From positions 124,001 to 188,000 of the IMG/VR virus record IMGVR_UViG_3300009103_000001: DNA of 64,000 nt. The stretch is one strand, 5' to 3'. A program made the translations under genes and the position numbers. The notes beneath the pieces are model-generated. The model made no database searches and was not told where the DNA came from. It saw only the letters and a program-made list of their open reading frames with translations. Positions 7,736-51,900 of this stretch are shown here, in pieces; position 1 is the stretch's first letter, and each line of letters opens with the position of its first letter.

Positions 7736-7741
7736 TTTTAA

Positions 7742-33295: not shown

Positions 33296-34333
33296 ATGGC
33301 TTTACCTAAAAAAAGAAAAAAAAATATAGATATAAAAGTTGTTGACCCTAACAGTGGTCCAGAAAAATGGGTAAGTCAGTTTTTAGAAAAAAATAAACAA
33401 TTTTTACCTAGGTCAGTAGATTTTGCTGATTTAGATGGTGGGTTTATTGATTTTGTAAATAATGATTTAGGTATAGTATTAAAGGGAAAAAGAGTACCAA
33501 CACACTTTTTAACACTACAGAGATGGAATGAATTCGCTAAAATTTGGCCACACACAGACAAGTATAAAAACATGAAAATACCATTTATTTCTATTGTTAG
33601 AAGACCTAATCCGGAAACAGGTACTAACCCTGCCGACTTTAAAATACCGATAAGAAAAAATTTCCCTTATATGCAAATACCTGTTTGGGACGGTAACCGT
33701 AAGGGGGCGGATATATACGGTATACCAAACCCAGTAGGGGTGGATATGTTCTATACTGTTAGATTTTTTTGTTATAGAATGCGTGAATTAAATAAATTAA
33801 GCCAAAAAGTCTTACAAACATTTGCGTCAGCACAAGCATATATTAACATAAAAGGACATTATTTCCCTATTATGTTAGAATCTATTGGAGATGAAAGTCA
33901 AATAGACGATTTAGAGGGTAAAAGATTTTATGTACAAACATATGAGATGAAGTTAATGGGTTATATTGTAGATGAGGAAGAATTTGAAGTTAAACCAGCT
34001 GTTAGTAGAATTTTTGTCACACAAGAAGTGGATGATAAAAAACCAAAACCAATTGTTAACTTTATGAATGATGAAGATAATGATAAATCATTAAAATGTA
34101 TAATACAATTTTTACCAAATGCTCCAACACAAATTAAATTTAAAGCAGACAATAAAACTAATTTTTCTAGTATTGAGGTAGATAATATAACTACTTATGA
34201 TATATATAAAAATGGTGTGTTAGTAACTGTACCTTTCACTGTAGAAGATACTGACCTTATAACTATTAATATTGTTAAAACAGATTCAACTAAAATTAGT
34301 GAAATAATACTTAGAGGATTAATTATAGTATAA
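33296..34333 (+). CDS. Putative neck / tail-completion protein
   Basis: 345-aa ORF in the structural operon; function inferred from position. Confidence 0.4.
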   Translation: MALPKKRKKNIDIKVVDPNSGPEKWVSQFLEKNKQFLPRSVDFADLDGGFIDFVNNDLGIVLKGKRVPTHFLTLQRWNEFAKIWPHTDKYKNMKIPFISIVRRPNPETGTNPADFKIPIRKNFPYMQIPVWDGNRKGADIYGIPNPVGVDMFYTVRFFCYRMRELNKLSQKVLQTFASAQAYINIKGHYFPIMLESIGDESQIDDLEGKRFYVQTYEMKLMGYIVDEEEFEVKPAVSRIFVTQEVDDKKPKPIVNFMNDEDNDKSLKCIIQFLPNAPTQIKFKADNKTNFSSIEVDNITTYDIYKNGVLVTVPFTVEDTDLITINIVKTDSTKISEIILRGLIIV

Positions 34334-37300
34334 TGAGTGACGGATGTGGACCTGACATAGTAAAATATTTTATTGTAGAACCTGGTGGTAGTGGTTCTGC
34401 AACGTTAACTGGGGTTACTGGTAATTTTAGTGTTTGTTCTGGAACAACATTTTTAAACACCATATCTGGTTGTACAGATAATGTTAATTTTAATAATAAT
34501 ATTTTTTATAATAATGGAGAAGTATTATTTGATTCCACTTTAACCGCCTGTACGGGAATATACACATCAAACATATATGGTTGTTCACCAATAACAGTTC
34601 AGGACGATTTAATATTAAATAGTGGTTTAACTTTTAATACGATAACTAATAATAATATTTTAGATAGGGTATTAGTTGTTAATAGTGGTGGTACTGTGGA
34701 ATATAGAGATGTTAGTTCTATTGCACCAGAAGCGAAACTACAAAACACATATTTTGTTTCCTCATTAAGTGGTGACAATTCTACGGCTTTGGTTGGGGAC
34801 ATAAATAAGCCTTGGAAAACGATAACGGGTGCTAGAGATGCATTATTAACTGATGCGTTAAGTGGGCAAACTTTAATATATGTATACCCAGGTATATATG
34901 ATGAAGAAGAGATACAATATGAAAATGGTAATATGTATCTATCTCCAGGGGTTTTAATAAAACCACCAAGAAGGTTTCATAGTTTAGATATTATTGGGGT
35001 AAACACGGGAACTAAAACTTTTACTGTTAATGGTAATTGGGCAACTTATATTACAGTAGGTTCCCAATTTAAAATGATAGGAAGTACAGGAAATGATGGT
35101 ATTTATACCGTTTTTAGTGTTTCTGATGTTGCGGCTACAACCGAAATAATAACTGTAGAACCTATTCCAGATGCTACGGTTGATGGATATATTACTTCTA
35201 ATAGATATATTATTCCTCTAGGTATTGCCCCAACATATGCACCACTATCTTCATCTGCAACAACATTTAATTTGTTTGGTGAAGGTGAAATTTATATTGA
35301 TAAAACCATTGACGATGATTGGGCCAATGGCTTTATTAGTGCCAATAATGATAGTCAGTTATATTGTGATATAAATAAAGCAACTATAGTTAAGGGGATT
35401 ATTTGTGGCTTGGGAGGTGATAGTAATGTTATATTTAAAGGTAATGTTTTATCTGTAACAGAAGATGGTTATGCAATGTCACCCAGAGGAAGCTCTAATT
35501 CTGTATTTGATTTTCAAAAAATTATAAGTTCTGGAACTACTTGGACGTATCGTATTAATGGTTTTAATGGTACAACCGTTCTTAATGCAGGTACATTACA
35601 AAATTATGGTGGTGGTGGATTATATGATGCTCCAATATCGATATCATATATGAGTGGTGGTAGGGCGACTATAAATTGTCCTGAAATAATTGCTGGTGAT
35701 AGTGCTAAATATGGTGTGGTTACAACATTTAATAGTGGTGGTAGATTTGAAGTTAATGGAAATATAATAGCTGGTACTGGAGTTCAGGGCGTTAGTATTA
35801 GTAGAGATACTGGTTGTGAAACAATAATAAATGGTAACATTACGACATATGATTCATATGCGTATATTAACGATAATATTTTAGGTGGTAGTAGTTCTAA
35901 TTCTAAAACTTATATTAATGGTGATATAATTGTAACAAATGGTACAGCAAATGCGATACGACACAATTCCCAAACACTTAGATTAAATGGTGAAATACTA
36001 AATGTTGACCCCTCTGGTACAGGAACAACTTATAACGGTATTAATATTGCTAATTCTGGAAATCTTATAATAGATAATCTTAAAATAAAAACAGATAATG
36101 AATCAATTACCGCAAGTGCTCCTAGAACAGTAAATATAGAAAATGCTTTATATATTGATAAACCATTACATTCCAACATAACAACAACTGGTTTATATAA
36201 TTTTACAGGGACTACAAATGTGGGTGATTTAGTAATATATAATACTCCGACAAATGACAATTCTTTAACTCAGATATTAGGTAGAAATTCTACAACTGGT
36301 GCTATAGAATATGTAGATGTTAATTCTATTATAACTGGAGCAACTTCACAAGATACATTTGTTACAGGATTCACATTTAATAATTCAACTTACGATTTAA
36401 CAATTAAACAAAATGAAGGACAACCTGATTTAGTCTCTAACTTAGCTGTTTTAGCTTCAGACGTATATGTTCTTAGTGGTGTATATAACCCTTCAACAGG
36501 TATTGTAACTTATACAAATTCAACAGGTGGTACATTCCAAGTTAGTGGCTTTACAACAGGTATGACCGATTCTTATACGACTGACGCGTACATAAGTGGT
36601 ACAGAGATACGATTTGATAATAATATTCAGGGGATTAATTTTTATAGTGTAGATTTATTACCATTATTAAGTGGTAAAACCGATAATACAACATTCAATA
36701 GTTATACCGCGATTACCCAAATGCAACTTGATACTAAAGTAGATTCTGCTAATAATGTTGGTGGTGCGAATGAATTTTTTAAAGATAAAAGTGGCACAAC
36801 ATTAAACTTTAGAACCCTTTCAGGTGGTTCAAATACAACAGTTTCTACAGTAGGTGATGTGGTTAAGGTGGACGTTACTATTCCAGCTGATACAAACACA
36901 TTTGTCACAGGATTCACTTATAACGACTCTAATACATTCACTATATCTAGAAATGATGGCGTAGATTTATCGGCCTCTATTAACACAATGACAGGTTTAA
37001 CTGTTAATGGTTCTGTATCAGCAACAACTTATTTTGGTGATGGGTCTAACTTAACAGGCATCTCTACCGATGATAACTTTGTTACAGGTGGTACTTTTAG
37101 TACTGGAACACTTACTTTAGAAAGACAAAACGGTATTGTAACTGTTACAGGGTTTACTAATGATATTGATACATTTAGTACTGGTGGTACTGTAACACAA
37201 GCCGCGACAAGTGGTAGTAGTGAGGTAATAGTACAGATAACTGGAAACGATGGTTTTACACCATATAATATAACAGGATTAACAGATACTTTTGTTAGTG

Positions 37301-39279
37301 ATTTTTCTTTTAGCTCCAATACATTTACAATAACCCAAAATGACGGCTCCACTTTTGATAGTAATTTAAATACGATTGAATTAGGTAATATATTAAGTGC
37401 TGTTACATTTAATATAGCAACATCAGGTACTATTTCAGCCACAACATTTAATGGCGGTACATTTAATGGAACCTTTATTGGTGATGGTAGTGGTTTAACA
37501 GGTATAACAGACAACGATACTTTTGTAACAGGGTTTACATATAATAACGCAAATACATTAACAATAGAAAGAAATGATGGTATTAATTTAAGTACTTCGA
37601 TTAATACAATGACAGGTTTAACTGTTAATGGAACATTATCAGCAACAACTTATTATGGTGACGGAAGTAATTTAACTGGTATTGGTGGGACATTTACAGG
37701 AAACACATCCGCTACTTGTATTACAGATTTATGGGTAACAAACATTAGTGGGTGTAGTCCGGTTACTATAGGTACAGAAGCAATATTTAACCAAGATGTA
37801 AGTGGCGCTACATCTTATTGGACAACCCCAAATACTGGTGGTGGTGGGCCAGGTTCAATGACTCCAGCGATAACGATAACACAACAAGGTAGTAGTCAAA
37901 ATTATTCGGGTCCAGCCATAAAACTTCATAATACAGTTAATAATGAAAATGCTTATTTATTTTATCAAGATGGTGGTAGTGGTGCAGATAATGGTAACGC
38001 ATTTAACTTTATAAGTGACGGTGGTTTTAATTTTGAGGCATCTGGTGACTTTGGAACTGGCGGTACAGGATTTTTCAAAATCGCTAAAGGGCAATCAAGT
38101 TTTATAATAGATGATAATGGGTCAGCACCAAGAACAGATATTAAAATACATAATGCTAATGGTGGTACGGCATACGCAAGATTAAATTTAGGGGCAACTA
38201 ATGATTATTGGTATTTTGAGGCAGATGACATTACTACACCAATGCATATTGGGTGGGATGACGGTGTTACAGAAAAAAATGTTTTTATATTTACTACAGA
38301 TTCAGGAACTATAGATACACCACTTTTCATAACAAGTGGGGCAAGTACAAACCAAGACCTTTTAACTGTTAGTGGAAGAACAAGAACAATAAATTTCCAA
38401 ATGATAAGTGGCGCAACTGATGGTTATATTTTAACTTCAGACGCAGATGGTAACGGTATATGGTTACCAAATATTTTTGTTACAGGAACAACTTTCGCTA
38501 GTAATCAATCAATAACATCAAGAAATGATGGTACAGAGATTTTTAAATTAAGTGGTGGTACGAATGTAACCTTATCAAACCCATCATCAAATCAAATTAA
38601 GATAGATGTAACAGATACCAATACAACAATAACTGGGTTTACTTATGATGACGCTAACACATTCACAATAAGTGATAGTGATGGGTCAAATTATTCTGCT
38701 TCTATTAACACAATGACAGGATTAACCATTAATGGTGATTTAAATGTTAATGGAGAATCAGTATTTAGTGGAAATAGTACAGATGTTGTACAAATATATG
38801 GTTCTGGGTCAACATCTCCAATATTTAGAATTCAAGGTTCAAGTGGTGAGTTGTTTAGTGTAACAGATAGTCTTGTTGGTGAATTATTCGCTGTTAATGA
38901 TATTTCTGGGATACCTATTTTACAAGTATATTCTGATAATAGAATAATATTGGGCGATAATTTAGCCCCATCATTATATACAACCGCTAAAGTAACCGCC
39001 TCATCTGGTTCATCGACATCTATTTATTCAGTACCAGTTAGTGCATATACGGGTGCGTGGTTTGAGTATACGGCTAATGATGGAACAAATTTAAGGGCGG
39101 GTAACATAGCTTCAATATTTACTGCTTCAGATGTTAATCATAATGAAACAACAACCACAGATATTGGGAATACAAACGATTTAATAATGGATGTTTCGGT
39201 TTCTGGTGGTAATGCAACACTAACAGCGTCAGCAACTACGAGTAATTGGGAAATAAAAACAATTATAAGGAGTATTTAA
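34333..39279 (+). CDS. Large tail fibre/spike protein with probable beta-helix region and repeated stalk modules
   Basis: 1648 aa, G/S/T/N-rich; YFVSSLSGDNST...KPWKTI beta-helix-type start; repeated TFVTGFTY...INTMTGLTVNG...GDGSNLTG modules. Confidence 0.7.
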   Translation: MSDGCGPDIVKYFIVEPGGSGSATLTGVTGNFSVCSGTTFLNTISGCTDNVNFNNNIFYNNGEVLFDSTLTACTGIYTSNIYGCSPITVQDDLILNSGLTFNTITNNNILDRVLVVNSGGTVEYRDVSSIAPEAKLQNTYFVSSLSGDNSTALVGDINKPWKTITGARDALLTDALSGQTLIYVYPGIYDEEEIQYENGNMYLSPGVLIKPPRRFHSLDIIGVNTGTKTFTVNGNWATYITVGSQFKMIGSTGNDGIYTVFSVSDVAATTEIITVEPIPDATVDGYITSNRYIIPLGIAPTYAPLSSSATTFNLFGEGEIYIDKTIDDDWANGFISANNDSQLYCDINKATIVKGIICGLGGDSNVIFKGNVLSVTEDGYAMSPRGSSNSVFDFQKIISSGTTWTYRINGFNGTTVLNAGTLQNYGGGGLYDAPISISYMSGGRATINCPEIIAGDSAKYGVVTTFNSGGRFEVNGNIIAGTGVQGVSISRDTGCETIINGNITTYDSYAYINDNILGGSSSNSKTYINGDIIVTNGTANAIRHNSQTLRLNGEILNVDPSGTGTTYNGINIANSGNLIIDNLKIKTDNESITASAPRTVNIENALYIDKPLHSNITTTGLYNFTGTTNVGDLVIYNTPTNDNSLTQILGRNSTTGAIEYVDVNSIITGATSQDTFVTGFTFNNSTYDLTIKQNEGQPDLVSNLAVLASDVYVLSGVYNPSTGIVTYTNSTGGTFQVSGFTTGMTDSYTTDAYISGTEIRFDNNIQGINFYSVDLLPLLSGKTDNTTFNSYTAITQMQLDTKVDSANNVGGANEFFKDKSGTTLNFRTLSGGSNTTVSTVGDVVKVDVTIPADTNTFVTGFTYNDSNTFTISRNDGVDLSASINTMTGLTVNGSVSATTYFGDGSNLTGISTDDNFVTGGTFSTGTLTLERQNGIVTVTGFTNDIDTFSTGGTVTQAATSGSSEVIVQITGNDGFTPYNITGLTDTFVSDFSFSSNTFTITQNDGSTFDSNLNTIELGNILSAVTFNIATSGTISATTFNGGTFNGTFIGDGSGLTGITDNDTFVTGFTYNNANTLTIERNDGINLSTSINTMTGLTVNGTLSATTYYGDGSNLTGIGGTFTGNTSATCITDLWVTNISGCSPVTIGTEAIFNQDVSGATSYWTTPNTGGGGPGSMTPAITITQQGSSQNYSGPAIKLHNTVNNENAYLFYQDGGSGADNGNAFNFISDGGFNFEASGDFGTGGTGFFKIAKGQSSFIIDDNGSAPRTDIKIHNANGGTAYARLNLGATNDYWYFEADDITTPMHIGWDDGVTEKNVFIFTTDSGTIDTPLFITSGASTNQDLLTVSGRTRTINFQMISGATDGYILTSDADGNGIWLPNIFVTGTTFASNQSITSRNDGTEIFKLSGGTNVTLSNPSSNQIKIDVTDTNTTITGFTYDDANTFTISDSDGSNYSASINTMTGLTINGDLNVNGESVFSGNSTDVVQIYGSGSTSPIFRIQGSSGELFSVTDSLVGELFAVNDISGIPILQVYSDNRIILGDNLAPSLYTTAKVTASSGSSTSIYSVPVSAYTGAWFEYTANDGTNLRAGNIASIFTASDVNHNETTTTDIGNTNDLIMDVSVSGGNATLTASATTSNWEIKTIIRSI

Positions 39280-39280
39280 A

Positions 39281-39973
39281 ATGAGTTTTGGAGATAAGAA
39301 TTTTACATATGGTCCTAGAATAATAAAGGGTGGTTTGGTATTCTATGTAGATGCAGCAAATCCTAAATCTTATGTTAGTGGAGATACAACAACTAATGAC
39401 TTAATTTCAAATATTACTGGAACGCTAGAAAATGGTGTAGGTTACTCAATTGATAATAACGGTAGTTGGTCATTTGACGGTAGTGATGATAATATATCTT
39501 GTGAACCAATAAATGAAATAAATAATGTAACATCATTAACATTTTCGTTTTGGGGTAAAAAGAATGGGTCAGGAGAGGTATTAGGGTTCAACACGATTCA
39601 AGATGTCACCACAGATAAAGTAGTTCTTTACTGGTGGTCAAATGGAATTGTTTATTTTGCTTGTAGAAATGGGGCATCAAATGTAAGTCCTAGCATTTCA
39701 TTATCATATGATACTAATTGGCATCATTTTGTGGGTGTTTATGTTGGTGGGGGTAATTTAAAATTATATGTTGATGGGGAATTATCTGATACTGAAAGCG
39801 GTGCACCAGCATCCCTAAGTTCAAATATTGGTGATAATTTAACCATTGGTTATGTTAATAATAGTAACTATTCAAAAGGAAACATATCAAATGTTAAAAT
39901 ATATAATAGGGCGCTTTCACAAACAGAAATAACACAAAACTATAACGCACTAAAAGTAAGATTCGGATTATAA
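39281..39973 (+). CDS. Single LamG/concanavalin-A-like domain virion protein
   Basis: YVDAANPKSY, SFDGSDD, WHHFVGVY, LYVDG, KIYNRALS. Confidence 0.85.
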   Translation: MSFGDKNFTYGPRIIKGGLVFYVDAANPKSYVSGDTTTNDLISNITGTLENGVGYSIDNNGSWSFDGSDDNISCEPINEINNVTSLTFSFWGKKNGSGEVLGFNTIQDVTTDKVVLYWWSNGIVYFACRNGASNVSPSISLSYDTNWHHFVGVYVGGGNLKLYVDGELSDTESGAPASLSSNIGDNLTIGYVNNSNYSKGNISNVKIYNRALSQTEITQNYNALKVRFGL

Positions 39974-42771
39974 TGGGGACGACAAGTGGATATATAACTA
40001 GAAATCAAGACTTAATCATTAATATGGATGCAGCTAACTCTCGTTCATATACTAGTGGTAGTACAACTTGTGAATGTTTGGTATCTACAGTATCGGGTAC
40101 TTTTGAGAACGGAACTAGTTTTTCACCAGAATTTGGTGGGGGATGGACATTTGATGGGACAAATGATTATTTAAATTTAGGAAACAGACCAAATATAAAT
40201 CCAGAATTAGATAGTTTTACGTGTAATATTTTTTTTAAGATAGACCCATCTTCTACAAGTAGTAATATTATTGCTAGTAAGGGTAATAATATAACCTCAG
40301 ATATTGGTTGGATGATATATTATTCTAGTACTAATGAGGTTTTAACTGTTAGGTGTAATGGAAACAATACTACATCTCAAAGAGCAGCACAATATATTCC
40401 AATAAATAAGGGTCAAAACTATATGGTTACAATGGTAATTAATAGAACCGATAACACGATTAAAGGTTATTTAAATGGTAGTAATGTTGGTTGGGTAAAT
40501 GGTAATTATAGTCAATCATTTACAGGAAATTCAATATCTGGTTTTGGTTCAATAACAAATAGTGATGACTTTTTAATAGGTGAAAGACCAAATCTAAATT
40601 TACCAATGTTTGGAACTATATATTTTTTTCAAACATATAATTTTGCACTATCTGAAGCACAGGTGTATAGAAATTTTAGTTTTTTTGGTGGTAGGTATGA
40701 TTTATCAGTTCCACCTCCACCTCCAACATTTTTTGATGATTATTCATTTAAATTTGATGGTGTGGATGAGTGGATAAGTTTAGGCGTAATAGATGATTTA
40801 AATGGCGGTATAAGTGATTTTAGTACCTCAACTTGGTTTAAATACGATGGTACTTTAGGTACATTAAGTCATATGATTTTAAGTGGTGGTATAGGTGTTA
40901 CTGATAGATTTTATATTCAATTAATAGCAAACAATACTTTAAGGTATGCTATGGGTGGTGGTTTTGATGATGTCACAATTACCACATTAAGTACTGGAAC
41001 TTGGTATAATTTAATAACTGTACAAAACGGAGCAGATGTAGATATTTATTTAAATGGAAGTTTACAAGGTAGTTTTACCGACCAAATACCTACAAGCAAC
41101 ATTGGTACTATAGTAAAGATTGGAAACTATATAAGTGGCAGTTATTATTGGGATGGTAACATAGATGAGGTGGCAATTTGGAATAGTGTTTTAACAACCG
41201 ACAATATTAACGATATCTACAATAGTGGTACACCCACTGATTTAACAAGTTTAAATCCAGTTGCTTGGTATAGAATGGGAGATAATGCCGTTTACAAATC
41301 ACCACAATGGTTATTACCATCAAATGAAAATAAGGATAAATTCAGTAATTATTCGATGAGTTTTGATGGTACTAATGATTATATTGATTGCGGTGTTCCA
41401 ACTTATTTAGATGGTAGTGAAACGGTAAGTGTTTCAATGTGGGTTAAATTTACAGATGTAACTACCGCTAGTTATACTACACTATTAACTTTAGGTTCTT
41501 CTTCACCAAGAGATTTATTTATGAGAATTAGACCATATGGAACCTCAAGAAGGATTGAGTTTGGTGTGTCTAATAATTTCGCAAGAGCAACAAGTACGGA
41601 ATTTTCTGATTTTTCTTCAGGAGTTTGGTACCACGTAATGGGGTTTTTTAATAGAAATCTTAATGATGGTACTGATTGTGAAATATGGTTAAATGGTTCA
41701 AAAATATTTGATATTGATGTTAATACATCTTTACCCGCAACCATTACAGATAATATGTATTTAGCTGCATTAGGAGAATGGGCACCACTTGAGGGTAGCT
41801 TGTGTGAAGTCGCTGTATGGAATACTGATGAAAGGGCTAACGCGTCAACAATATATAATGGAGGTGTTCCTTCAGACCTTTCAAGTCTTAATCCAAATTC
41901 ATATTATAGATTGGGTGAAAACGCAACATTCAAAGACCCACAATGGCTATTACCAAATAACGAAAATAAAGATAAGGCATCAAATTATTCAATGAGTTTT
42001 GATGGCGCTGATGATTATATAACGGTTCCTAATTTCACAACAAGTGGTGATGATGTAACTATTTCTTTTTGGTTTAAATCTGTAAATTTATCTGGTAGTG
42101 ACCCACATACTACATCTGCATTTGTTTGGGGTGATAGTAATAACTTTGTGTATTATAATGTCAATGAAGTAATTTATGCAAAAATAAATGGAAGTACCTC
42201 AATAATAGTTGCGAATTCTGGTGGTGTACCTCAATTGTTTGGGTTAGGTAATTGGCATCATTTAGCTGTTGTTAAAAACAGTTCTACTGTTACTTGGTGG
42301 ATAGATGGAATTTCTTACTCAGACTTAGGTTCTGGTGGTTCTGGTGGGTTTACAATGAATACAATAGGTTCAGCAACTGCGGGAGCATATTACTTCTTAA
42401 ATGGAAGTATGGATGATGTTGCAATTTTTGATACTGCTTTAAGTAGTGGTGATATAGCAACAGTTTATAATAATGGAACACCATCTGACTTATCTTCCTT
42501 AAATCCATTATGTTATTGGAAACTTGGAGATGACGCAACATTTAACACAAACTGGAGTATCACTGACCTAGGAAATGGTGGGTATTCTGGTGGTACAAGT
42601 AGTAATATGGATATAAATGATAGAGTAGGTGAAGCGCCAAGTAGTTCAGGAAATACAGTTAGTATCAACATGGATATAAACGATAGAGATGGAAATGCAC
42701 CAAATAGTGAAAATAACGCATTAAGTTATAATATGGTATTAAGTGGAAGAACAACTGATGTACCAACATAA
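39973..42771 (+). CDS. LamG-like protein with 4 domains
   Basis: Four FDG-x-x-D...W(Y/H)...YxNG...(I/M)D(E/D)VA-type units; PQWLLP-NENKDK junctions. Confidence 0.85.
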   Translation: MGTTSGYITRNQDLIINMDAANSRSYTSGSTTCECLVSTVSGTFENGTSFSPEFGGGWTFDGTNDYLNLGNRPNINPELDSFTCNIFFKIDPSSTSSNIIASKGNNITSDIGWMIYYSSTNEVLTVRCNGNNTTSQRAAQYIPINKGQNYMVTMVINRTDNTIKGYLNGSNVGWVNGNYSQSFTGNSISGFGSITNSDDFLIGERPNLNLPMFGTIYFFQTYNFALSEAQVYRNFSFFGGRYDLSVPPPPPTFFDDYSFKFDGVDEWISLGVIDDLNGGISDFSTSTWFKYDGTLGTLSHMILSGGIGVTDRFYIQLIANNTLRYAMGGGFDDVTITTLSTGTWYNLITVQNGADVDIYLNGSLQGSFTDQIPTSNIGTIVKIGNYISGSYYWDGNIDEVAIWNSVLTTDNINDIYNSGTPTDLTSLNPVAWYRMGDNAVYKSPQWLLPSNENKDKFSNYSMSFDGTNDYIDCGVPTYLDGSETVSVSMWVKFTDVTTASYTTLLTLGSSSPRDLFMRIRPYGTSRRIEFGVSNNFARATSTEFSDFSSGVWYHVMGFFNRNLNDGTDCEIWLNGSKIFDIDVNTSLPATITDNMYLAALGEWAPLEGSLCEVAVWNTDERANASTIYNGGVPSDLSSLNPNSYYRLGENATFKDPQWLLPNNENKDKASNYSMSFDGADDYITVPNFTTSGDDVTISFWFKSVNLSGSDPHTTSAFVWGDSNNFVYYNVNEVIYAKINGSTSIIVANSGGVPQLFGLGNWHHLAVVKNSSTVTWWIDGISYSDLGSGGSGGFTMNTIGSATAGAYYFLNGSMDDVAIFDTALSSGDIATVYNNGTPSDLSSLNPLCYWKLGDDATFNTNWSITDLGNGGYSGGTSSNMDINDRVGEAPSSSGNTVSINMDINDRDGNAPNSENNALSYNMVLSGRTTDVPT

Positions 42772-42783
42772 TATTTAAATGAT

Positions 42784-45700
42784 ATGATAATAACACATAA
42801 CGGAATAATTGTAATGAATAATGGGACTATCCTAAGTAAGGTGTCAGGTGATGGACCAGGTCCAGGCCCATTCACACCGTTTTCTAACGATTATTCATTT
42901 GAATTTGATGGTACGGATGACTACGTTTCGATTTATAACGGTGCGTCAGGAAGTGGCCCAATACAGTTTACTGCTTCAGATGATTTTTCTATTTCTGCAT
43001 GGATAAAAACATCAAGTCTATCATTAACTAATTATATCTTATCATTTAGGGGTACAGCTTTAATATGGTTAAATACTTTTGCATCAAGTGGAAATATAAG
43101 GGCAAGATTATATTTGAGGGATAATAGCTCAAATGTTGTAACTATATCAACCTTTAATAATTCAACTGGTTGGATTGCTGCAGATACTTGGACTAATGTA
43201 ATAGTCACAAGAAATGGGACAACAAAAGAATTAAATATTTATTTAAATGGACAATCAGCACAACTAACAACATCAGACACCACAACTGATGATTTTACTT
43301 TATACGATAAAATAAGTATAGGAAATGATAATTATACAACTGGTCGCTATTGGTTTGATGGTAAAATAGATGAGGTTTCTATTTTTAATACTGAATTATC
43401 GTCTGGTAATATCTCAACAATCTATAATAATGGTACACCCTCTGATTTAACAAGTTTAAACCCAGTTGTTTGGTATAGAATGGGAGATAATGCCGTTTAC
43501 AAATCACCACAATGGTTACTACCAAATAATGAAAATAAGGATAAGATATCAAATTATTCAATGTCGTTTGATGGTACTAATGATTATGTAGAGACATCTA
43601 ACACTTTTTCATTGTTAGATGGTCAGACAACCGCTACCTTTTCAATGTGGATTAAACCAGATGCCATTGGAGCTTATCAGTATTTGTTTTCAGTAGTTAG
43701 GAGTGCAACGAGTACAGAATTTCAAGTTTCATGTTATTTGGATAATGTAGGTAGGATTAGAGTGTTTGGAGATAGTACAGCAAGATATGTTTATTCAAAT
43801 ACAGGGGTAGTGAGTGCAGGGGTTTGGACTCATCTTTGCGTTACTTTTGATTTATCACAATCACTTGCAGACAGGGTAGCAATCTACGTTGATGGGGTTG
43901 ATGAAGTAGCGGTGGGATTTGCCCAGATGCACCAAACTCAATTCGCAACCTCAACAAGTGGGTTAGCAATAGGAAGAAATCAAAATGGGCATTTACCAAA
44001 TTTTGCAGGATTGATAGACGATGTATCTGTTTGGGATTCTGACCAATCCGCTAATGTTTCTACAATTTATAATGGAGGTGTTCCTTCGGACCTTTCAAGT
44101 CTTAACCCTATTAATTATTGGAGAATGAGTGAAAACGCAACATTCAAAGACCCGCAATGGTTATTGCCAAATAACGAAAATAAAGATAAATTCAGTAATT
44201 ATTCAATGAGTTTTGATGGGACGGATGATTATATAAGTTTAAATTCATTAAATTCAACTTTACAACCTTTATCAGTTGGTACTATATCAATGTGGTGGAA
44301 ACCAACTAACTCAACCCCATCACCTGGTGAGTGTTTATTTAGTGTGGCAAGTACAACAGTTACAAATGATTATTTCGCCATGTATAATACCTCAAGTGGT
44401 AAATTTTATGCCCAATTAAAAGATAACAATACAAATTATTGGGTATTAGAAACTGATACTGCTGTATTTTTAAATGATGCTTGGGCACACGTTGTAATAA
44501 GACATAATGGTACTGAACCAGAATTATATGTTAATGGAAGTAAACCATCACAAACTTTTACAATATCCATAAATAAAACTAAGTGGTGGGATGATATTAC
44601 AATAGAACTAATAAATATAGGTTCTTTAATTTGGTCTGGTGGTCATTCAGGCAAAGCAACTGGTAATATAGATGAAGTTTCTGTTTTTGATTCTGCGTTA
44701 TCGTCTGGTGATATTTCTGCAATTTACAATAATGGTACACCCACTGATTTAACAAGTTTAAATCCCATAGCTTATTATAAAATGGGAGATGACGCAACCT
44801 TCTCTACAAACTGGACCATACCTGACCAAACTGGAAGTAATGATGGCACAAGTGCTAACATGGATATTAATGATAGGGCTGGAGATGCTCCAAGCAGCTC
44901 AGGAAACACAGTTAGTTATAACATGGACATTAATGATAGGGTAGGAGAAGCACCAGGTAGTGAAAACAACGCATTAAGTTATAATATGGTATTAAGTGGA
45001 AGAACCATAGATGTACCAAAAGAACCATTTTCAAAAAATTCAATGAGTTTTGATGGTACGGATGATTATATAGACTTATCACAACAAAATTTAGGAACAA
45101 CAAACACTATTAGTTTATGGTTAAAAAACCCATCAGTTAAAGGTGTAGTACAAGAAACTTTATTAGGTAACCCACTAAACACATTTAATCAATTTTTAAA
45201 TGTTGATTGGAATACCGGTAAAATGTTTTATAAAGACAATTCTAATAATAGAGTTGAATGGAATACTTTATCCAATATTAATAACACTAATTGGAATAAT
45301 ATTATAATTACAAGAGTCGGTGCAACAGTAACTTTATATTTTAATGGGGTAAGTCAAGGAACTGGTACATCTTTTGGTACGTTAGGAGATAGTGAATTTA
45401 GATATTTAGGTATTAATTTTAATAGTAATACACAAGCGTTTGAGGGTAATATTGATGAAATGGCCGTTTGGGATACCGACCAAACATCAAATATCTCAAC
45501 AATATATAATAATGGTGAACCTACTGACTTAACAAGTTTATCTCCACATTTGTGGTTTAGGTTGGGTGAAAACGCAACATTTAAAGACCCACAATGGTTA
45601 ATTCCAAATAACGAAAATAAAGATAAATTCAGTAATTATTCGATGAGTTTTGATGGTACAAATGATTATATTGATTGTGGTGATAGTAATGATTTTAGTT

Positions 45701-46434
45701 TTGGTAATGGGACAACTGACAGTCCTTTTAGTGTTTCATTTTGGTTAAACGCTAGTACTTTCGCAACTAATCTTGGGATTATATCAAAAGATTATGATGG
45801 TTCTAATAGAGAGTGGACTATTGGTCAATTTTCATCATCTAATAAAATAAGATTTTTATTAAAAAATAATGGTGGTGGTAATCAACAAAGTATTGACAGT
45901 ACAAATACATTATCAACAGGACAGTGGTATCACATAGTTTGTACATATGATGGGAGTGGCGGTAATAATGCAGCTGATGGATTAACAATTTATATTGATG
46001 GAACCGCTGAAACACCAACAAACATTACCAAACAAACTTATACTGCTATGGCTAACACCATTGCCCCGTTAACATTTGGGGCATACCAAACAGGTGCGAG
46101 TCAATTAGGTATAAGCGGTAAAATTGATGACGTTTCAATATTTTCAGTAGAACTATCAAGTTCAGAAGTATCCACCATTTGGAATAATGGTATACCTAAA
46201 GATGAAAGTGGTACACCTAATTTGGTTGGTTACTGGAGAATGGGAGAAGAATCCATTGTGGGATATATTGGTGGTGTTCCAGCATACTGGACCATACCTG
46301 ACCAAGTAGGTGGTAATGACGGAATAAGTACCAATATGACTATTGATGACAGAGTTGGAGACGCTCCAGATAGTTCAGGAAATACAGTTAGTTTTAACAT
46401 GGATATTAATGATAAAACTACTGACGTACCATAA
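42784..46434 (+). CDS. LamG-like protein with 5 domains
   Basis: Five LamG-like units; an internal copy of the terminal NMDINDR cassette suggests gene fusion. Confidence 0.85.
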   Translation: MIITHNGIIVMNNGTILSKVSGDGPGPGPFTPFSNDYSFEFDGTDDYVSIYNGASGSGPIQFTASDDFSISAWIKTSSLSLTNYILSFRGTALIWLNTFASSGNIRARLYLRDNSSNVVTISTFNNSTGWIAADTWTNVIVTRNGTTKELNIYLNGQSAQLTTSDTTTDDFTLYDKISIGNDNYTTGRYWFDGKIDEVSIFNTELSSGNISTIYNNGTPSDLTSLNPVVWYRMGDNAVYKSPQWLLPNNENKDKISNYSMSFDGTNDYVETSNTFSLLDGQTTATFSMWIKPDAIGAYQYLFSVVRSATSTEFQVSCYLDNVGRIRVFGDSTARYVYSNTGVVSAGVWTHLCVTFDLSQSLADRVAIYVDGVDEVAVGFAQMHQTQFATSTSGLAIGRNQNGHLPNFAGLIDDVSVWDSDQSANVSTIYNGGVPSDLSSLNPINYWRMSENATFKDPQWLLPNNENKDKFSNYSMSFDGTDDYISLNSLNSTLQPLSVGTISMWWKPTNSTPSPGECLFSVASTTVTNDYFAMYNTSSGKFYAQLKDNNTNYWVLETDTAVFLNDAWAHVVIRHNGTEPELYVNGSKPSQTFTISINKTKWWDDITIELINIGSLIWSGGHSGKATGNIDEVSVFDSALSSGDISAIYNNGTPTDLTSLNPIAYYKMGDDATFSTNWTIPDQTGSNDGTSANMDINDRAGDAPSSSGNTVSYNMDINDRVGEAPGSENNALSYNMVLSGRTIDVPKEPFSKNSMSFDGTDDYIDLSQQNLGTTNTISLWLKNPSVKGVVQETLLGNPLNTFNQFLNVDWNTGKMFYKDNSNNRVEWNTLSNINNTNWNNIIITRVGATVTLYFNGVSQGTGTSFGTLGDSEFRYLGINFNSNTQAFEGNIDEMAVWDTDQTSNISTIYNNGEPTDLTSLSPHLWFRLGENATFKDPQWLIPNNENKDKFSNYSMSFDGTNDYIDCGDSNDFSFGNGTTDSPFSVSFWLNASTFATNLGIISKDYDGSNREWTIGQFSSSNKIRFLLKNNGGGNQQSIDSTNTLSTGQWYHIVCTYDGSGGNNAADGLTIYIDGTAETPTNITKQTYTAMANTIAPLTFGAYQTGASQLGISGKIDDVSIFSVELSSSEVSTIWNNGIPKDESGTPNLVGYWRMGEESIVGYIGGVPAYWTIPDQVGGNDGISTNMTIDDRVGDAPDSSGNTVSFNMDINDKTTDVP

Positions 46435-46447
46435 AAATAAAATAATA

Positions 46448-46455
46448 TATTTATA
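46448..46455 (+). promoter_or_regulatory. Candidate phage late promoter TATTTATA
   Basis: Upstream of 46484. Confidence 0.45.
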
Positions 46456-46483
46456 ATAATAACAATAAAAAAAACAATAAATT

Positions 46484-46747
46484 ATGTCACATAAATATGA
46501 ACACAGAAATTTTATGATTTTCAATGTAAGTGAATTGGGTTCTGTTAACTTTTCAGAAGTTTTGGAATCTTCAATTAATACAGTTAGAAAATCCATAGAT
46601 GGAACACAAACATTCGTTAAATGGGATGATGAAACAATACCACCTTCGGTTGATGCTTTAACAACAAAAGATGGTCCACATCTTTACGAAGATATGTTAG
46701 CAATATTATCAACTTCTGGTTGGACAAATACAGAAATAGTTGAGTAG
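46484..46747 (+). CDS. Small protein within the LamG cluster
   Basis: 87-aa ORF with its own TATTTATA motif; function unknown. Confidence 0.6.
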   Translation: MSHKYEHRNFMIFNVSELGSVNFSEVLESSINTVRKSIDGTQTFVKWDDETIPPSVDALTTKDGPHLYEDMLAILSTSGWTNTEIVE

Positions 46748-46749
46748 TT

Positions 46750-48897
46750 ATGAGTGGAGTAGTCGGACCAAGATTATCGACCATACCACCAACATTTTTT
46801 GATGATTATTCATTTAAATTTGATGGGTCAGATGATAATATACCTATTGGTACAGCATCACTTGGTATAACATCATCAATATCTGTTTCTGCTTGGGTTA
46901 AAATACCCACCACAAACACAGGTGGACCAGCACCAAATATTCAAGAAATAATATGTGAGGATACAACAGGTGGAACACAAAGAAATTGGGGTTTATTTTG
47001 GAGACATATAAGTGTAGCAAACAAGTATTTTCAATTTAGCGTTTTTCACACCGATGGTACGGCTACAGGAATTCAATCGACAGGAATAGTCCCTAATGAT
47101 GGTAATTGGCATCACGTTATGGGAACTTTTGATGGAACAACAAATGCAAATGGATTAAAATTATATGTCGATGGTACTTTATTTCAAACTACTGCTGGAA
47201 GTACAGGAATAAGAAGTACATCAACTGTAGAACCTTCAATTGGTAGTTTAACTAATGCAGGAAATTGGTTTTTTGAAGGTAACATTGATGAGGTATCGGT
47301 TTGGGATAGCGTACAAGATATTAGTAATGTTTGGGATGGTAATGGTAAACCGATAGATATAACTTCCACAAATCCAATGGTTTGGTACAGAATGGGAGAC
47401 AATGCAACATATAGGGACCCTCAATGGTTACTTCCAAATAACGAAAATAAAGATAAGGCATCAAATTATTCAATGTCGTTTGATGGCACTAATGATTATA
47501 TTGATTGTGGTAATATCCCAGAAATAAAAAATAATACTGAAATGACACTTTCATTTTGGGCAAAAATTGAAGATATGGCTTTCAGGATTTTATTTGGTCA
47601 AAATTTAGTGGCGGGTAATGATATTTTTCAATTATATCTATGGGGAGCAACACCTGTTTTGTATATGTGGATAAAAAATGGTGGTACGGGAACGGTTAGT
47701 TATGTAGACAACGCAACATTAACTTCTTTAGTTAGTGTTGGGGTTTGGAATCATTTTACATTAGTGTTTAATGGTTCTTTAACTAATGACGATAGATGTA
47801 AATTATTTATTAATGGTGGTGGTGATGCAATTACAAATAGAGGTACAATGCCAACAGCATTTACTAATAGTGATGAACCATTTTTAATAGGTAGAGGAAC
47901 AAATGGTTATTTTCAAGGAAATATAGACAATGTTGCAGTTTGGGATTCTGACCAATCCGCTAATGTTTCTACAATATATAATGGTGGCATTCCTTCAGAC
48001 CTTTCAAGTCTTAATCCTATTAATTATTATAAAATGGGAGAAAACGCAACATATAGGGGTCAATGGTTATTACTTTCAAATGAGAATAAAGATAAATTTA
48101 GTAATTATTCAATGAGTTTTGATGGGACGGATGATTATATTACAATGGGTAACCCTTCAGAACTACAAATTACAGGAAATCTTACTTTATCTGCGTGGAT
48201 AAAACATCCTAACCCAATTACAAATAATAATTTTATTTGTGGTAGGGATAACGGCTCTGCTAGTCGTAACTATTCTATTTGGAGTAGAAGTGGGACAGGA
48301 GTAGCGTTTGCTATATTTAAAAGTGGTGTATTTACATACATAGCAGATAGTGTCACAACAGTAGATGATGGTGAATGGCATCATGTGATGGGGGTTAATG
48401 ATGGCACTGACTTGAAACTATACATCGATGGGGCGTTAAAAGGGACTAATTCTGGAGGTGGAGGAACCATCGACAATGATGTTGTAGATTTTACGGTTGG
48501 GTCTTACGTGGTTTATAGTGGAGATGAGTTTGAGGGTCAGATTGATGGTGTGGCTGTTTTTAATAGTGATAAGAGTGGTAATATAAGTACAATCTACAAT
48601 GGTGGTATTCCTACAGACCTATCGGGAGAATCTGGGTTGGTTGGCTATTGGAGAATGGGAGAAGATGCAACTTTCTCCACAAACTGGACAATACCAGACC
48701 AAGTAGGAGGTAATGATGGCACAAGTGTTAACATGGATATTAATGACAGAGTTGACGACGCACCAAGTAGTTCAGGAAATACAGTTAGTTATAATATGGA
48801 TATTAATGACCGAGTTGGGGATGCCCCAAATAGTCAAAATAATATATTAAGTGCAAACATACCATTAAGCGGAAGAACAACTGATGTTCCCACGTAA
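46750..48897 (+). CDS. LamG-like protein with 3 domains
   Basis: Three LamG-like units plus a terminal cassette. Confidence 0.85.
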   Translation: MSGVVGPRLSTIPPTFFDDYSFKFDGSDDNIPIGTASLGITSSISVSAWVKIPTTNTGGPAPNIQEIICEDTTGGTQRNWGLFWRHISVANKYFQFSVFHTDGTATGIQSTGIVPNDGNWHHVMGTFDGTTNANGLKLYVDGTLFQTTAGSTGIRSTSTVEPSIGSLTNAGNWFFEGNIDEVSVWDSVQDISNVWDGNGKPIDITSTNPMVWYRMGDNATYRDPQWLLPNNENKDKASNYSMSFDGTNDYIDCGNIPEIKNNTEMTLSFWAKIEDMAFRILFGQNLVAGNDIFQLYLWGATPVLYMWIKNGGTGTVSYVDNATLTSLVSVGVWNHFTLVFNGSLTNDDRCKLFINGGGDAITNRGTMPTAFTNSDEPFLIGRGTNGYFQGNIDNVAVWDSDQSANVSTIYNGGIPSDLSSLNPINYYKMGENATYRGQWLLLSNENKDKFSNYSMSFDGTDDYITMGNPSELQITGNLTLSAWIKHPNPITNNNFICGRDNGSASRNYSIWSRSGTGVAFAIFKSGVFTYIADSVTTVDDGEWHHVMGVNDGTDLKLYIDGALKGTNSGGGGTIDNDVVDFTVGSYVVYSGDEFEGQIDGVAVFNSDKSGNISTIYNGGIPTDLSGESGLVGYWRMGEDATFSTNWTIPDQVGGNDGTSVNMDINDRVDDAPSSSGNTVSYNMDINDRVGDAPNSQNNILSANIPLSGRTTDVPT

Positions 48898-48978: not shown

Positions 48979-51900
48979 ATGGCGAACGAATTTGTAATAA
49001 AGAACGGTTTTATCTCCAAGGGAGATTCTATAGTTAATGGAACCATTTCTGGTGAAACATTAAATCTTACAACAATACCGACAAACGATAATTCTCAAAC
49101 ACAAGTATTAGTTAGAAATAATACCACAGGTGTGGTAGAATATAGAGACGCATCATCATTAAGTGGTGGGTCAGGGACAAATACATTTGTAACAGGAACA
49201 ACTTTCGCTAGCAATCAATTTGTTACCACAAGAAATGATGGTGTAGATGTATTAAAATTTAGTGGTGGGTCAAACGTAACTTTATCCAACCCATCTTCAA
49301 ACCAAATTAAAATAGATGTTTCTTTACCACCATCTATGAATACGTATGTAACTGGTTTTACATACAACGATAATAACACATTTACAATATTTGATAACGT
49401 TGGTGGGGTATTCCCAGCAACAATTAATCAAGTAAGTGGTTTAACGGTTAATGGTGATATTACAGTAACAGGTATATCTAATTTAAATACTGTAACCGCC
49501 ACCACAATTGATTTTGATTTAAATTATACTGGTGCAACGGCAGAAGGTAGATTGTCTTGGAACGGAGATGATGGGACACTTGATTTAGGAATGGGTGGTG
49601 GAAATGTAACCCAACAAATTGGTCAAGAAATATATTATAAAATTAAAAATCAAAGTGGGGCAACAATATCTAATGGTAGGGTTATTAGAAATGCGGGTTC
49701 GCTTGGTGCATCAGGAAGAATATTAGGTGAGTATATGATTGCGGATGGTACATATCCTTTCGCAAAAACTTTAGGTATTGCAACAGAAGATATCGCAAAT
49801 GGTGACGAAGGTTTTGTTACTGAATTTGGTGTTGTTAGAGGAATTGACACCACAGGTTCTATTTATGGTGAATCTTGGTCAGATGGTGATGTATTATATG
49901 TGTCTCCAACCATTGCTGGTGGATTAACAATCGTTGAACCAACCGCACCGAATCAAGTTTTAGAAATGGGCGTTGTATTAAATTCGGCTATTAATGGTTC
50001 TATATTTGTAGATAGACATCTTTCTACTAAGTTAGGTGATATTAGTGATGTAGAAACCACAGGTTGTACAAATGGTGATTTAATTGTTTATAACTCCGCA
50101 ACCACTGTTTGGGAATATAGTAAAGTATTAAATGGTGATTATGATATTAACGGGACATTGTCTGCAACAACATATTATGGTGATGGTTCTAATTTAACTG
50201 GAATATCTACACAAATAGATACTGGAAATGTTCTTTGGGTTGATAATATATTTGGAAACGATGGTACTGCATTAGTAGATAGACAAGATAGACCTTGGGC
50301 TAGTATCGCCACCGCTATTAGTAATGCATCTACAAATGATACTATATTAGTTAGACCAGGTGATTATGTTGAATCATCGTTTACGTTAAACCCAGCGACA
50401 TCATTAGTAAGTCAAGGTGGGGCTAAAGTAACATCTATCAGTGCGTCAACTACTACAGGTAATTTTATTACTATTTCAGGTTCTTCTTATATGGAAGGAT
50501 TTACAGTTTATACCCCCACAGATGATTCCGCAGCATTATATATGAACGACTCAACCGCTGGTATTGTAACCACTTTAAATGATGTACATTTTAAAGGTTC
50601 AAGTACAGTATCACCACCTTTAGGTAAGGGTGTTGTTATGGATACGGGATTAGCTGGTAATGGTAAAATTATATATAGAGAACTTAGATATGGTGGTGGT
50701 AATTTAAATATATTAGCTGAAGTTAATAAAGGTATTTTTGCATTAGATGGTATGCATGTACCAGGTGGAGGAACAGTTAATAAAGCCATCCAAATGAATG
50801 GTGGTAGAGGTCAATTAATTAATGTTAATGTTGGTAACCCCTCTTGCGATACTGCATTAAGTGTTAGTGGTACATCTTCAAACAAACCAGTTGTTGCGGG
50901 ATTTGGTTTTAACATATTTAATGTTCCAATAGGGATAGAAATAACATCAGATGACTATGATGTTGAGGTTCAACAAGGTAGATTAGATGCTGGAACTACA
51001 AACGTATTAGTGTCAAGTGGTGTTACAGGGTCAAATGGTAAATTAAATCTAACCTCATTTTCAATGGATTCAACAAAGTTGTCTATTCCGTATGGTTGGG
51101 TTGATTCACCACACACATTTCAATTTTCAGATATTGGTAATTCACAAAATATTGAACCTATTTTAAGAAGTTGGTCAAACTTTGAGGTTGGTCATGCAAA
51201 TAAGGGGTTTGAAACCAATCTTGGTCGTGGTTCTGAATATCAGAATGGGTTACATGTTCATAGTAGTGGAACAACAGGTACAACACACCTTTCAATGTCT
51301 GCCAAAACAGAGGGTGTTACTTGGTCTTTTGAGTCATTAACCGCTGGAGAACAACTTTATATTGGTAGTGAAGAAAAATATTCTAATGGTGAATTTGTTA
51401 GATTTAACGGTTTTGAGGTTGGTTATACTGGTTCGACTGGTGGGACATATACAATAGAATATTATTCTGGTGGTACTTGGGTAGATGTAAAATATCAAGT
51501 AGTACACCATAATTTAGGTTATAATTACGCAAATACATTGTTTTCTAGGTCGGTTGATTCTTTGGAGGATATTAGGATTGGTATAGATGAGAATAGTGGT
51601 TGGGAAAGTACAACACTTTTTGGTCATGAGGCAAAATGGATTAGAATTACAATGGTTACACCTCCAGCATCCTTACCCCAATTTGATTTATTGTGGTTGG
51701 AACCATCACATACAGAAGTTAATGATAATGGTATATTAAATTTTTACGGTAATGCTCTATATAGGGACACATTAGTTTCTGCTGGTAATATATTTGGTTT
51801 AGATGGTGCGGTTACAGATGCATCAATAACGGTTGGTTCTACGGTAACTTGGGACCATATTATGGAAAACTCACAATTTAATACTTCGGGTATGATGGGC

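What the first reader, a model, noticed from the sequence alone, without database searches (positions are those of the whole stretch)
39973..48897. Russian-doll LamG proteins: closing strands stacked at the C-terminus match the domain count
Seen: LamG units are joined by W-(L/I)-(L/I)-P-x-NENKDK-x-SNYSMSFDG, and each run of units ends in a cassette of short N(M/I)...(R/K)...(D/E/N)(A/V)P repeats. The repeat number equals the number of units in all four runs: 3/3 (932-aa gene, after its self-contained first domain), 3/3 and 2/2 (1216-aa gene) and 3/3 (715-aa gene). Inference: each domain is inserted into a late loop of the previous one, and the chain returns to complete the domains in reverse order. 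This would be a nested, hairpin-like lectin stack rather than beads on a string, possibly very stable and extendable by in-frame insertion.
Basis: partly seen in the sequence, partly recalled or inferred. Interest (0 to 1): 0.8.

Follow-up and report, generated by a model that had tools for sequence, protein, structure and literature searches.

The report
Nested, strand-closed LamG lectin stacks
Three tail-module genes of an uncultured marine phage encode lectin-like (LamG) domains that appear to be inserted one inside another, each missing one strand that is supplied later, in reverse order, by a short repeat at the end of the run; this is an unusual and apparently undescribed way to build a multi-domain binding protein.

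Summary
The window holds 7 near-identical linkers and 11 closing repeats with an exact 21-residue period. Repeat and unit counts match in all four runs: 3/3, 3/3 plus 2/2, and 3/3.

The nesting interpretation is supported and sharpened. Each unit is a circularly permuted LamG domain: body, then strand b1 (YWRMGD), then b2 (WLLPN), then b3. The closing repeat is b3, the strand that in ordinary LamG domains (PDB 4QVS, and g230 here) sits just before the FDG strand. The next unit is inserted in the b2/b3 hairpin, so the b3 strands pile up at the end in last-in, first-out order.

Evidence:
- About 300 homologs fall into balanced architectures, with about 2% true exceptions.
- 99 free-standing single-unit permutants exist.
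- AlphaFold2 models the whole 715-aa protein as rigid (pTM 0.81) with an ordered cassette. Deleting unit 1 disorders only the third repeat (pLDDT 84-90 falls to 36-50).
- Relatives with one surplus repeat lie next to a gene that ends in an open LamG body.

No contact map was available, so exact strand pairing is inferred. The function, probably glycan binding on the tail, is also inferred. No published description was found.

The parts
39281..39973 (+). g230: single ordinary (non-permuted) LamG protein, used here as an in-genome comparator. Its N-terminal strands (LVFYVDAAN ... NITGTLENG) come before the FDG strand.
   Evidence: Laminin_G_3, E 1.4e-18
39973..40707 (+). g932 residues 1-245: self-contained ordinary LamG domain with its own N-terminal strands. 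It needs no closing repeat.
40735..42537 (+). g932 nested run: U1 body+b1 40735-41289, linker 41290-41343, U2 41344-41925, linker 41926-41979, U3 41980-42537.
42538..42768 (+). g932 closing cassette: b2+c1 42538-42639, c2 42640-42702, c3 42703-42768 (3 repeats for 3 open units).
42886..44796 (+). g1216 first run: U1 42886-43494, linker 43495-43548, U2 43549-44139, linker 44140-44193, U3 44194-44796.
44797..45018 (+). g1216 first cassette: b2+c1 44797-44892, c2 44893-44955, c3 44956-45018 (3 for 3).
45031..46254 (+). g1216 second run: U4 45031-45576, linker 45577-45630, U5 45631-46254.
46255..46431 (+). g1216 second cassette: b2+c1 46255-46368, c2 46369-46431 (2 for 2).
46801..48669 (+). g715 run: U1 46801-47406, linker L1 47407-47460, U2 47461-48048, linker L2 48049-48099, U3 48100-48669.
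   Evidence: AF2 model
48670..48894 (+). g715 cassette: b2+c1 48670-48765, c2 48766-48828, c3 48829-48894. In AF2, c3 is ordered only when U1/L1 are present.

Best explanation
Each repeated unit is a circularly permuted LamG (concanavalin-A-like) jelly roll. It is written in the order body (starting at the SNYSMSFDG strand), then b1 (YWRMGD), then b2 (QWLLPN), then b3.

In ordinary LamG domains b1-b2-b3 come before the body. In this family they follow it, and such permuted units exist as free 230-280-aa proteins.

In the window's genes a complete unit has been inserted into the b2/b3 hairpin of the previous unit, repeatedly. The chain therefore runs body1-b1-b2, body2-b1-b2, body3-b1-b2-b3, and then returns with b3 for unit 2 and b3 for unit 1. 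The 21-residue closing repeats are these postponed b3 strands, used last-in, first-out.

The result is a rigid hairpin-like stack. Both chain ends lie at the first unit, and the innermost unit forms the far end.

The conserved parts are the scaffold: linkers, cassette and body ends. The body interiors are hypervariable, as expected for ligand-binding surfaces. Given the position in the tail-fibre/baseplate module, the proteins are most likely virion-borne glycan-binding (host-recognition) proteins.

Shown computationally: counts, homology of the strands, architectures, AF2 confidence behaviour, free single units and split genes. Inferred: exact strand pairing, inside-out folding order, stability, virion location and ligand.
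For: Counts and conservation in the window:
- Counts and the 21-aa period hold in the window.
- Bodies share 24-44% identity, while linkers are 77-90% identical even at the DNA level.

Balanced architectures in homologs:
- Of 120 first hits, 50 are BBBccc, 22 BBcc and 6 BcBc.
- Gap lengths are quantised at 16-19, 31-43, 53-63, 74-84 and 95-105 aa, corresponding to 0-4 repeats.
- In the simple classes, 54/58 two-unit and 110/118 three-unit proteins are balanced.
- Depth-4 BBBBcccc proteins have short linkers (11-13 aa) and a correspondingly short repeat period (17-19 aa).
- BBBcccBBcc recurs in the very divergent P0130.
- Linker type tracks the head of the repeat assigned to it in reverse order, across different architectures.

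Structure prediction:
- The full-length AF2 model has pLDDT 84.6 and pTM 0.81, with the cassette at 84-92.
- In the N-terminal truncation, c1 and c2 are unchanged and c3 falls to 36-50.

Identity of the closing strand and the unit:
- b1-b2-c aligns with residues 7-50 of the solved single LamG 4QVS_A, directly upstream of its xSLDGVDDY strand (E 1.3e-9).
- 99 of 119 hits to unit 3+c1 are free single-unit proteins with the order body-b1-b2-b3.
- Comparing BBcc with BBBccc relatives shows the extra material is one contiguous body-b1-b2-b3 module inside the b2/b3 turn.

Split genes:
- In 3 of 3 cases, a protein that starts at b2 and carries one surplus repeat is preceded, 1-9 nt upstream, by a gene ending exactly at b1 of an open body.

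Context:
- A tail sheath gene lies at 56711-59494, and fibre-like giant genes flank the cluster.
Against: - No coordinates, PAE or contact map could be obtained, so strand partners are not observed directly.
- AF2 uses the same co-evolution that underlies the covariation, so these two lines of evidence are not fully independent.
- The residue covariation between linker 1 and repeat 3 is perfect (98/98) but rests on only 1-3 independent changes on the tree.
- A pooled mutual-information test could not tell which body each repeat contacts.
- A few homologs are unbalanced: P0066, P0088, P0006, P0218 and P0287.
- ESM Atlas structure rows are ambiguous about which body repeat 1 joins.
- No experimental or proteomic evidence shows that the proteins are made or sit on the virion.
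Confidence: 0.75

Rival explanations
1. Same closing-strand principle but canonical register. The b1-b2 of each linker plus a returning repeat complete the NEXT body. The final b1-b2-c1 folds back onto the FIRST body, giving a closed ring rather than a hairpin stack.
For: The sequence across a repeat-to-body junction matches the canonical order seen in 4QVS. All counts and the AF2 truncation result can be made to fit if b2+c1 re-docks on the new first body. ESM Atlas alignments of single-domain clusters span query residues about 10 to 672.
Against: Free single-unit proteins with body-b1-b2-b3 show that the following strands can complete their own body. The innermost unit of every run has exactly that contiguous layout. 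Insertion of one more unit would then require rewiring all existing partners. A 9-residue b2-to-FDG connection would have to cross the missing strand's slot. In the truncation, b2+c1 stayed at pLDDT 91-93 while c3, which would still have its body, collapsed.
Confidence: 0.12
2. The C-terminal repeats form a separate small domain or an attachment/oligomerisation motif. Their number matches the unit number only because repeats and units were co-duplicated.
For: The repeats are regular (21 aa) and each has the same predicted local structure. The tail module context would suit an attachment motif.
Against: Repeat 3 loses all order when unit 1 is removed, while repeats 1-2 do not. BBBccc cannot arise by tandem duplication of a body+repeat pair. 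The repeats are homologous to a core strand of solved LamG domains. Surplus repeats are matched by open bodies in the neighbouring gene.
Confidence: 0.04
3. The units are complete without the repeats. The repeats are peripheral, loosely bound strands, and AF2 over-interprets them.
For: AF2 can dock terminal peptides with unwarranted confidence. A few natural proteins lack one repeat.
Against: The inner units lack any counterpart of the GTLxNG strand that ordinary LamG domains have between b2 and the FDG strand. The rule holds over very divergent lineages, and the repeat period scales with linker length.
Confidence: 0.08

Closest known systems
Ordinary LamG / Laminin_G_3 (concanavalin-A-like) domains, e.g. 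PDB 4QVS, laminin LG1-3, neurexin LNS
   Same: The fold family is the same: Pfam PF13385 hits and Foldseek probability 1.0 to laminin LG and neurexin domains. The same strands b1, b2 and b3 are recognisable by sequence.
   Different: In known structures the strands come before the body in one contiguous domain, and tandem LG domains are beads or cloverleaves. Here the strands follow the body and b3 is postponed to the end of the run. Whole-model TM to any PDB entry is only about 0.2-0.25.
Recursive nested domain insertion, e.g. sandwich-barrel hybrid motifs in cyanobacterial RNA polymerase (six-level nesting cited in PMC13114784)
   Same: A domain of one fold is inserted into a loop of another copy of the same fold, repeatedly, giving A1-B1-C-B2-A2 patterns.
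   Different: The fold (LamG) and the setting (phage tail-module proteins) are different. The returning part is a single 21-aa strand repeat, so the nesting is readable as a countable cassette. Depth varies freely (1-4) between close relatives.
Circular permutation in the concanavalin A family (my own knowledge: ConA is permuted relative to other legume lectins)
   Same: It shows that this jelly roll tolerates new termini. The free single-unit proteins found here are genetic permutants of LamG.
   Different: ConA is permuted after translation and at a different site. It is not nested.
Donor-strand complementation in chaperone-usher pili and archaeal filaments
   Same: An incomplete beta-sandwich is completed by a strand supplied from elsewhere. 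The split gene pairs in relatives suggest completion between two polypeptides.
   Different: In the window the completion is within one chain. The fold is LamG, not Ig-like. In the split pairs two strands from the two ends of the partner would be donated. No chaperone or usher is involved. Completion between chains is inferred, not shown.

Membership tests
Laminin_G_3 / concanavalin-A-like lectin-glucanase superfamily | Significant match to the family profile | tested here: met
   PF13385 with E 6e-58, 5e-94 and 1e-58, giving 4, 5 and 3 stretches
Laminin_G_3 / concanavalin-A-like lectin-glucanase superfamily | Two-sheet jelly-roll fold | tested here: met
   The AF2 model is all-beta with pLDDT 84.6. 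Foldseek probability is 1.0 to laminin LG, neurexin LNS and pentraxin.
Laminin_G_3 / concanavalin-A-like lectin-glucanase superfamily | Contiguous domain with N-terminal strands before the FDG strand (canonical order) | tested here: not met
   This holds only for g230 and the first domain of g932. The 11 repeated units have b1 and b2 after the body and b3 displaced to the cassette.
Nested (discontinuous) domain insertion | Host domain sequence is interrupted by a complete guest domain and resumes afterwards | tested here: met
   The extra module in BBBccc versus BBcc lies inside the b2/b3 turn. The P0131 body is interrupted and resumes. This is sequence-level evidence.
Nested (discontinuous) domain insertion | The resumed segment is structurally part of the host domain | tested here: inconclusive
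   In AF2, repeat 3 is ordered only when unit 1 is present. No coordinates were available to see the pairing.
Donor-strand complementation systems | Missing strand supplied by another polypeptide | not testable with these tools
   The window genes are balanced within each chain.
Phage tail fibre / receptor-binding proteins | Encoded in the tail or baseplate module | tested here: met
   A tail sheath gene lies at 56711-59494 (phrog_23, E 2e-53). Flanking genes of 1648 and 1129 aa have fibre-like repeats.
Phage tail fibre / receptor-binding proteins | Presence in the virion and binding to a host receptor | not tested
   No proteomic or binding data exist, and there is no cultured relative.

The most novel reading that the evidence does not exclude
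The closing-strand grammar also works between proteins. In relatives, though not in this window, a gene ending in an open LamG body (stop codon right after b1) is followed within 1-9 nt by a gene whose product starts with b2 and carries one surplus closing repeat at its C-terminus. The downstream protein would then clasp the upstream protein's last domain with both of its ends. In the 1400-aa family such clasps could chain several structural proteins together. This would be a new, chaperone-free, two-strand donor-complementation mechanism for assembling phage tail appendages. The cis-nested proteins of this window would be the fused form of the same principle.
Probability: 0.4. Interest if true: 0.85.

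Novelty: new variant of a known kind. Interest (0 to 1): 0.72.

Why it matters
If true, this is a simple, readable rule for building rigid multi-lectin proteins: every open body must be matched by one closing strand, last-in, first-out.

- It would explain how marine phages can add, remove or swap binding domains by single in-frame insertions without breaking the scaffold.
- It gives annotators a way to read the domain topology, and even the partner genes, of a large uncharacterised viral protein family directly from sequence.
- It offers protein engineers a natural template for nested, mechanically coupled beta-sandwich arrays whose two termini sit at one end.
- It is also a clean natural test case for folding of domains whose interior strand is synthesised hundreds of residues later.

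Tried and rejected
- **DNA and protein searches of cultured phages.** There was no DNA match, only weak single-domain cyanophage LamG hits. The tail sheath is at most 31% identical to any cultured phage, so the host is unknown.
- **Direct PDB sequence search with the 715-aa protein.** No hit.
- **Foldseek against PDB and BFVD.** Only single-domain similarity to solved structures. Uncharacterised marine-virus proteins were the best viral matches.
- **Residue covariation.** The association between linker 1 (W/F/Y versus I) and repeat 3 (R versus I/V) is perfect, but only 1-3 independent changes underlie it. I rejected it as statistical proof.
- **Pooled mutual information between repeats and first strands of bodies.** It was dominated by column entropy and was uninformative.
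- **An ad hoc anchor parser for repeats.** It failed and was replaced by an alignment.
- **Length-based repeat counting.** It is meaningless for the giant (>2000 aa) cellular multi-LamG hits, which I set aside.
- **Apparent exceptions re-examined by eye.** Apparent BBBBccc exceptions are BBBBcccc with a short period, and P0186 is frameshifted in the cassette. P0035 starts at the Met inside the b1 motif and its 1609-bp contig leaves no room upstream, so I read it as a 5'-truncated gene (my inference).
- **Literature searches.** Searches for nested, permuted or strand-swapped LamG in phages found nothing relevant.
Full report
**What is there**

The region holds four consecutive + strand genes with LamG domains:
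- g230 (39281-39973)
- g932 (39973-42771)
- g1216 (42784-46434)
- g715 (46750-48897)

An 87-aa ORF lies between the last two. Pfam finds 1, 4, 5 and 3 Laminin_G_3 domains.

The genes sit in the structural half of a low-GC (about 30%) genome. Fibre-like genes of 1648 and 1129 aa flank them, and a tail sheath gene follows at 56711-59494. A DNA polymerase and a helicase lie on the other strand upstream.

The identical 715-aa protein is on record on a 210-kb contig. No cultured phage is close: there is no DNA match, the tail sheath is at most 31% identical, and only weak single-domain cyanophage LamG hits appear. ESM Atlas neighbours are nearly all viral.

**Check of the observation**

The repeats have an exact 21-residue period (S-x-x-M-x9-P), seen as invariant columns in a 46-protein alignment.

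The 11 domain bodies share only 24-44% identity. They are conserved only at their first strand (SNYSMSFDG) and their last about 40 residues. The linkers are 77-90% identical even as DNA. The conserved parts are thus exactly the pieces the nesting model needs as scaffold.

**What the closing repeat is**

Ordinary LamG domains carry three short strands before the FDG strand. Examples are g230 and the first domain of g932. I call these strands b1 (like LVFYVDAAN or YWxFDE), b2 and b3 (GTLxNG...).

In the repeated units, b1 (YWRMGD) and b2 (QWLLPN) come after the body, inside the linker, and b3 is absent there. After the last body of a run, b1 and b2 are followed by GNDGTSxNM..., which is the first closing repeat.

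In some homologs this segment reads WWRFEGSGTTAxDSGSGGNDGTLTNG. It aligns, at E 1.3e-9, with residues 7-50 of the solved single-domain LamG 4QVS_A, directly upstream of its xSLDGVDDY strand. The closing repeat is therefore the canonical b3 strand of the fold, not an added decoration.

**The unit exists on its own**

I searched with unit 3 plus its b1-b2-c1. Of 119 new hits, 99 were free proteins of about 230-280 aa. They start with Met, have a median of 24 residues before the body, and end with b1-b2-b3. These are genetic circular permutants of LamG. The innermost unit of every run in the window has this same contiguous layout.

**Count rule in homologs**

I built profile HMMs for bodies (B, including b1) and closing repeats (c) and applied them to about 320 collected proteins.
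- Among the first 120 hits: BBBccc 50, BBcc 22, BcBc 6, and one canonical domain plus BBBccc 9.
- The stretches between bodies are quantised: 16-19 aa (no repeat), 31-43 (one), 53-63 (two), 74-84 (three) and 95-105 (four).
- Among 265 apparently complete proteins of at most 1700 aa, 54/58 two-unit and 110/118 three-unit proteins are balanced under a crude automatic rule.
- Most remaining cases parse as balanced by eye. These include BBBBcccc proteins with 11-13-aa linkers and a correspondingly short 17-19-aa repeat period, BBBcccBBcc in the very divergent P0130, a (Bc)x7 array, BBccBc, BBBccBcc, BBBcBccc and BBBcBBcccc.
- Every balanced word I parsed is a valid bracket expression.
- True exceptions are few: P0066, P0088 (which looks like an unequal crossover between two repeats), P0006, P0218 and P0287. 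P0186 is frameshifted.

**Order of closure**

The head of each repeat tracks the type of one linker, in reverse order.
- In three-unit proteins, linker 2 varies (NENKDK, NSALxNY, NKAQDVF and others) and repeat 2 varies with it (SSGNTVS, YSGGGIS, xSGNGxS). Linker 1 and repeat 3 stay of the NENKDK / SxNNALS type.
- The same code holds in other architectures. A TKIDN-type first linker goes with a DNINQGLS-type last repeat both in two-unit proteins and in five-unit BBBcBBcccc proteins.
- Comparing close BBcc and BBBccc relatives shows that the extra material is one contiguous body-b1-b2-b3 module sitting inside the b2/b3 turn of unit 2. The old first repeat becomes repeat 2.
- One residue pair is perfectly associated in 98/98 proteins: linker-1 W/F/Y versus I, with repeat-3 R versus I/V. 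It reflects only 1-3 independent changes, so I give it little weight.

**Structure prediction as a differential test**

Only two AF2 jobs were allowed, and no coordinates are returned. I therefore compared two constructs with alignments of equal depth.

| Construct | Mean pLDDT | pTM | c1 region | c2 region | c3 region |
|---|---|---|---|---|---|
| Full-length g715 | 84.6 | 0.81 | 90-92 | 90 | 84-90 |
| Residues 238-715, unit 1 and linker 1 removed | 85.9 | 0.82 | 91-93 | 82-89 | 36-50 |

- A pTM of 0.81 is high for three domains and implies a fixed arrangement.
- In the full-length model each repeat shows the same strand/turn pattern.
- In the truncation, c1 and c2 keep their strands. Repeat 3 loses its strands, and its last 14 residues fall below pLDDT 50.

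The cassette is therefore not an autonomous domain, and the last repeat depends on the first unit, as last-in, first-out closure predicts.

**Split genes in relatives**

Proteins that begin with a b2-like segment (M-x-T-x-Y-x-x-P-Q-W-L-x-P-E-N...) carry one repeat more than they have bodies.

I looked up three such cases. In all three, the gene immediately upstream (1-9 nt away) ends exactly at b1 of a body that has no b2 or b3 (...VAWYRFE*...YWNRMGDN*...VAWYRMGD*). The counts balance across each gene pair.

This extends the rule beyond one chain and suggests completion between polypeptides. No such pair is present in the window, where all four runs balance within each chain.

**Which body does each repeat complete?**

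Two registers fit the counts and the truncation.
- **Preferred register.** Body, following b1-b2 and returning b3 form one unit.
- **Canonical register.** The preceding linker plus a repeat complete the next body, and the last b1-b2-c1 closes back on the first body.

I prefer the first for four reasons:
- The free single-unit proteins prove that layout folds.
- The innermost unit is identical in layout to those free proteins.
- Insertion of a unit then needs no rewiring of existing partners.
- It avoids a short crossover over the empty strand slot.

ESM Atlas alignments are ambiguous on this point, and a pooled mutual-information test was uninformative. A contact map would settle it.

**Function**

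This is inferred only. The fold, the hypervariable body interiors on a conserved scaffold, and the tail-module position point to virion-borne carbohydrate-binding proteins used in host recognition. The hairpin topology puts both termini at the first unit and the innermost unit at the tip.

**Comparison with what is known**

LamG domains, circular permutation in this superfamily, recursive same-fold insertion and donor-strand complementation are each known. An example of recursive same-fold insertion is the RNA polymerase sandwich-barrel motifs (PMC13114784). I found no description of permuted LamG units nested with a countable strand-return cassette, or of split versions. Relatives in UniProt/BFVD are uncharacterised proteins of uncultured marine viruses. 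I therefore rate it a new variant of known kinds.

Noticed in passing
window 46484-46747 (+): An 87-aa ORF (MSHKYEHRNFMIF...) fills the 315-nt gap between g1216 and g715. It has no LamG motif and its function is unknown.
   Followed up: no
window 34333-39279 and 48979-52368 (+): The 1648-aa and 1129-aa proteins flanking the LamG cluster share repeated modules (FVTGFTYND-NTFTI-RNDG ... LTVNG ... ATTYYGDGSNLTGI) typical of fibre-like proteins. No PHROG matched the first, and only an unknown-function PHROG matched the second.
   Followed up: partly
window about 32700: Divergent switch point. Genes left of about 32.7 kb are on the - strand (DNA polymerase 25223-28141, helicase 30885-32705). Genes to the right are on the + strand (structural). 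GC skew changes sign at the same place.
   Followed up: partly
L001:5346-5999 with 6001-8964; L003:78-2492 with 2501-4732; L004:2-2416 with 2426-5983: In related contigs a LamG domain is split between two adjacent genes exactly between strands b1 and b2. The downstream protein carries one surplus closing repeat. This suggests strand donation between two structural proteins.
   Followed up: partly
P0150, P0140, P0207, P0212 and relatives (about 1400 aa): A family with architecture b2-B-B-B-c-B-cc-B-ccc-B starts with a b2 segment and ends with an open body. In L004 the next gene starts with b2, so these proteins could form a chain of clasps.
   Followed up: partly
g1216 residues 1-20 (window 42784-42843) and homologs P0006, P0015, P0135, P0146, P0178: A conserved N-terminal peptide MIITHNG-I-(L/V)-x-N-x-G-x-I-L recurs. 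Other short conserved N-terminal peptides appear in other family members (MILGLGNTIPS..., MxIINPYxF..., MANTIDWGQGAVNNT...). These are possibly virion-attachment adaptors.
   Followed up: no
L001:375-2199: The 100-kb related contig encodes Cpn60 and Cpn10 chaperonin homologs a few kb upstream of its split LamG gene pair.
   Followed up: no
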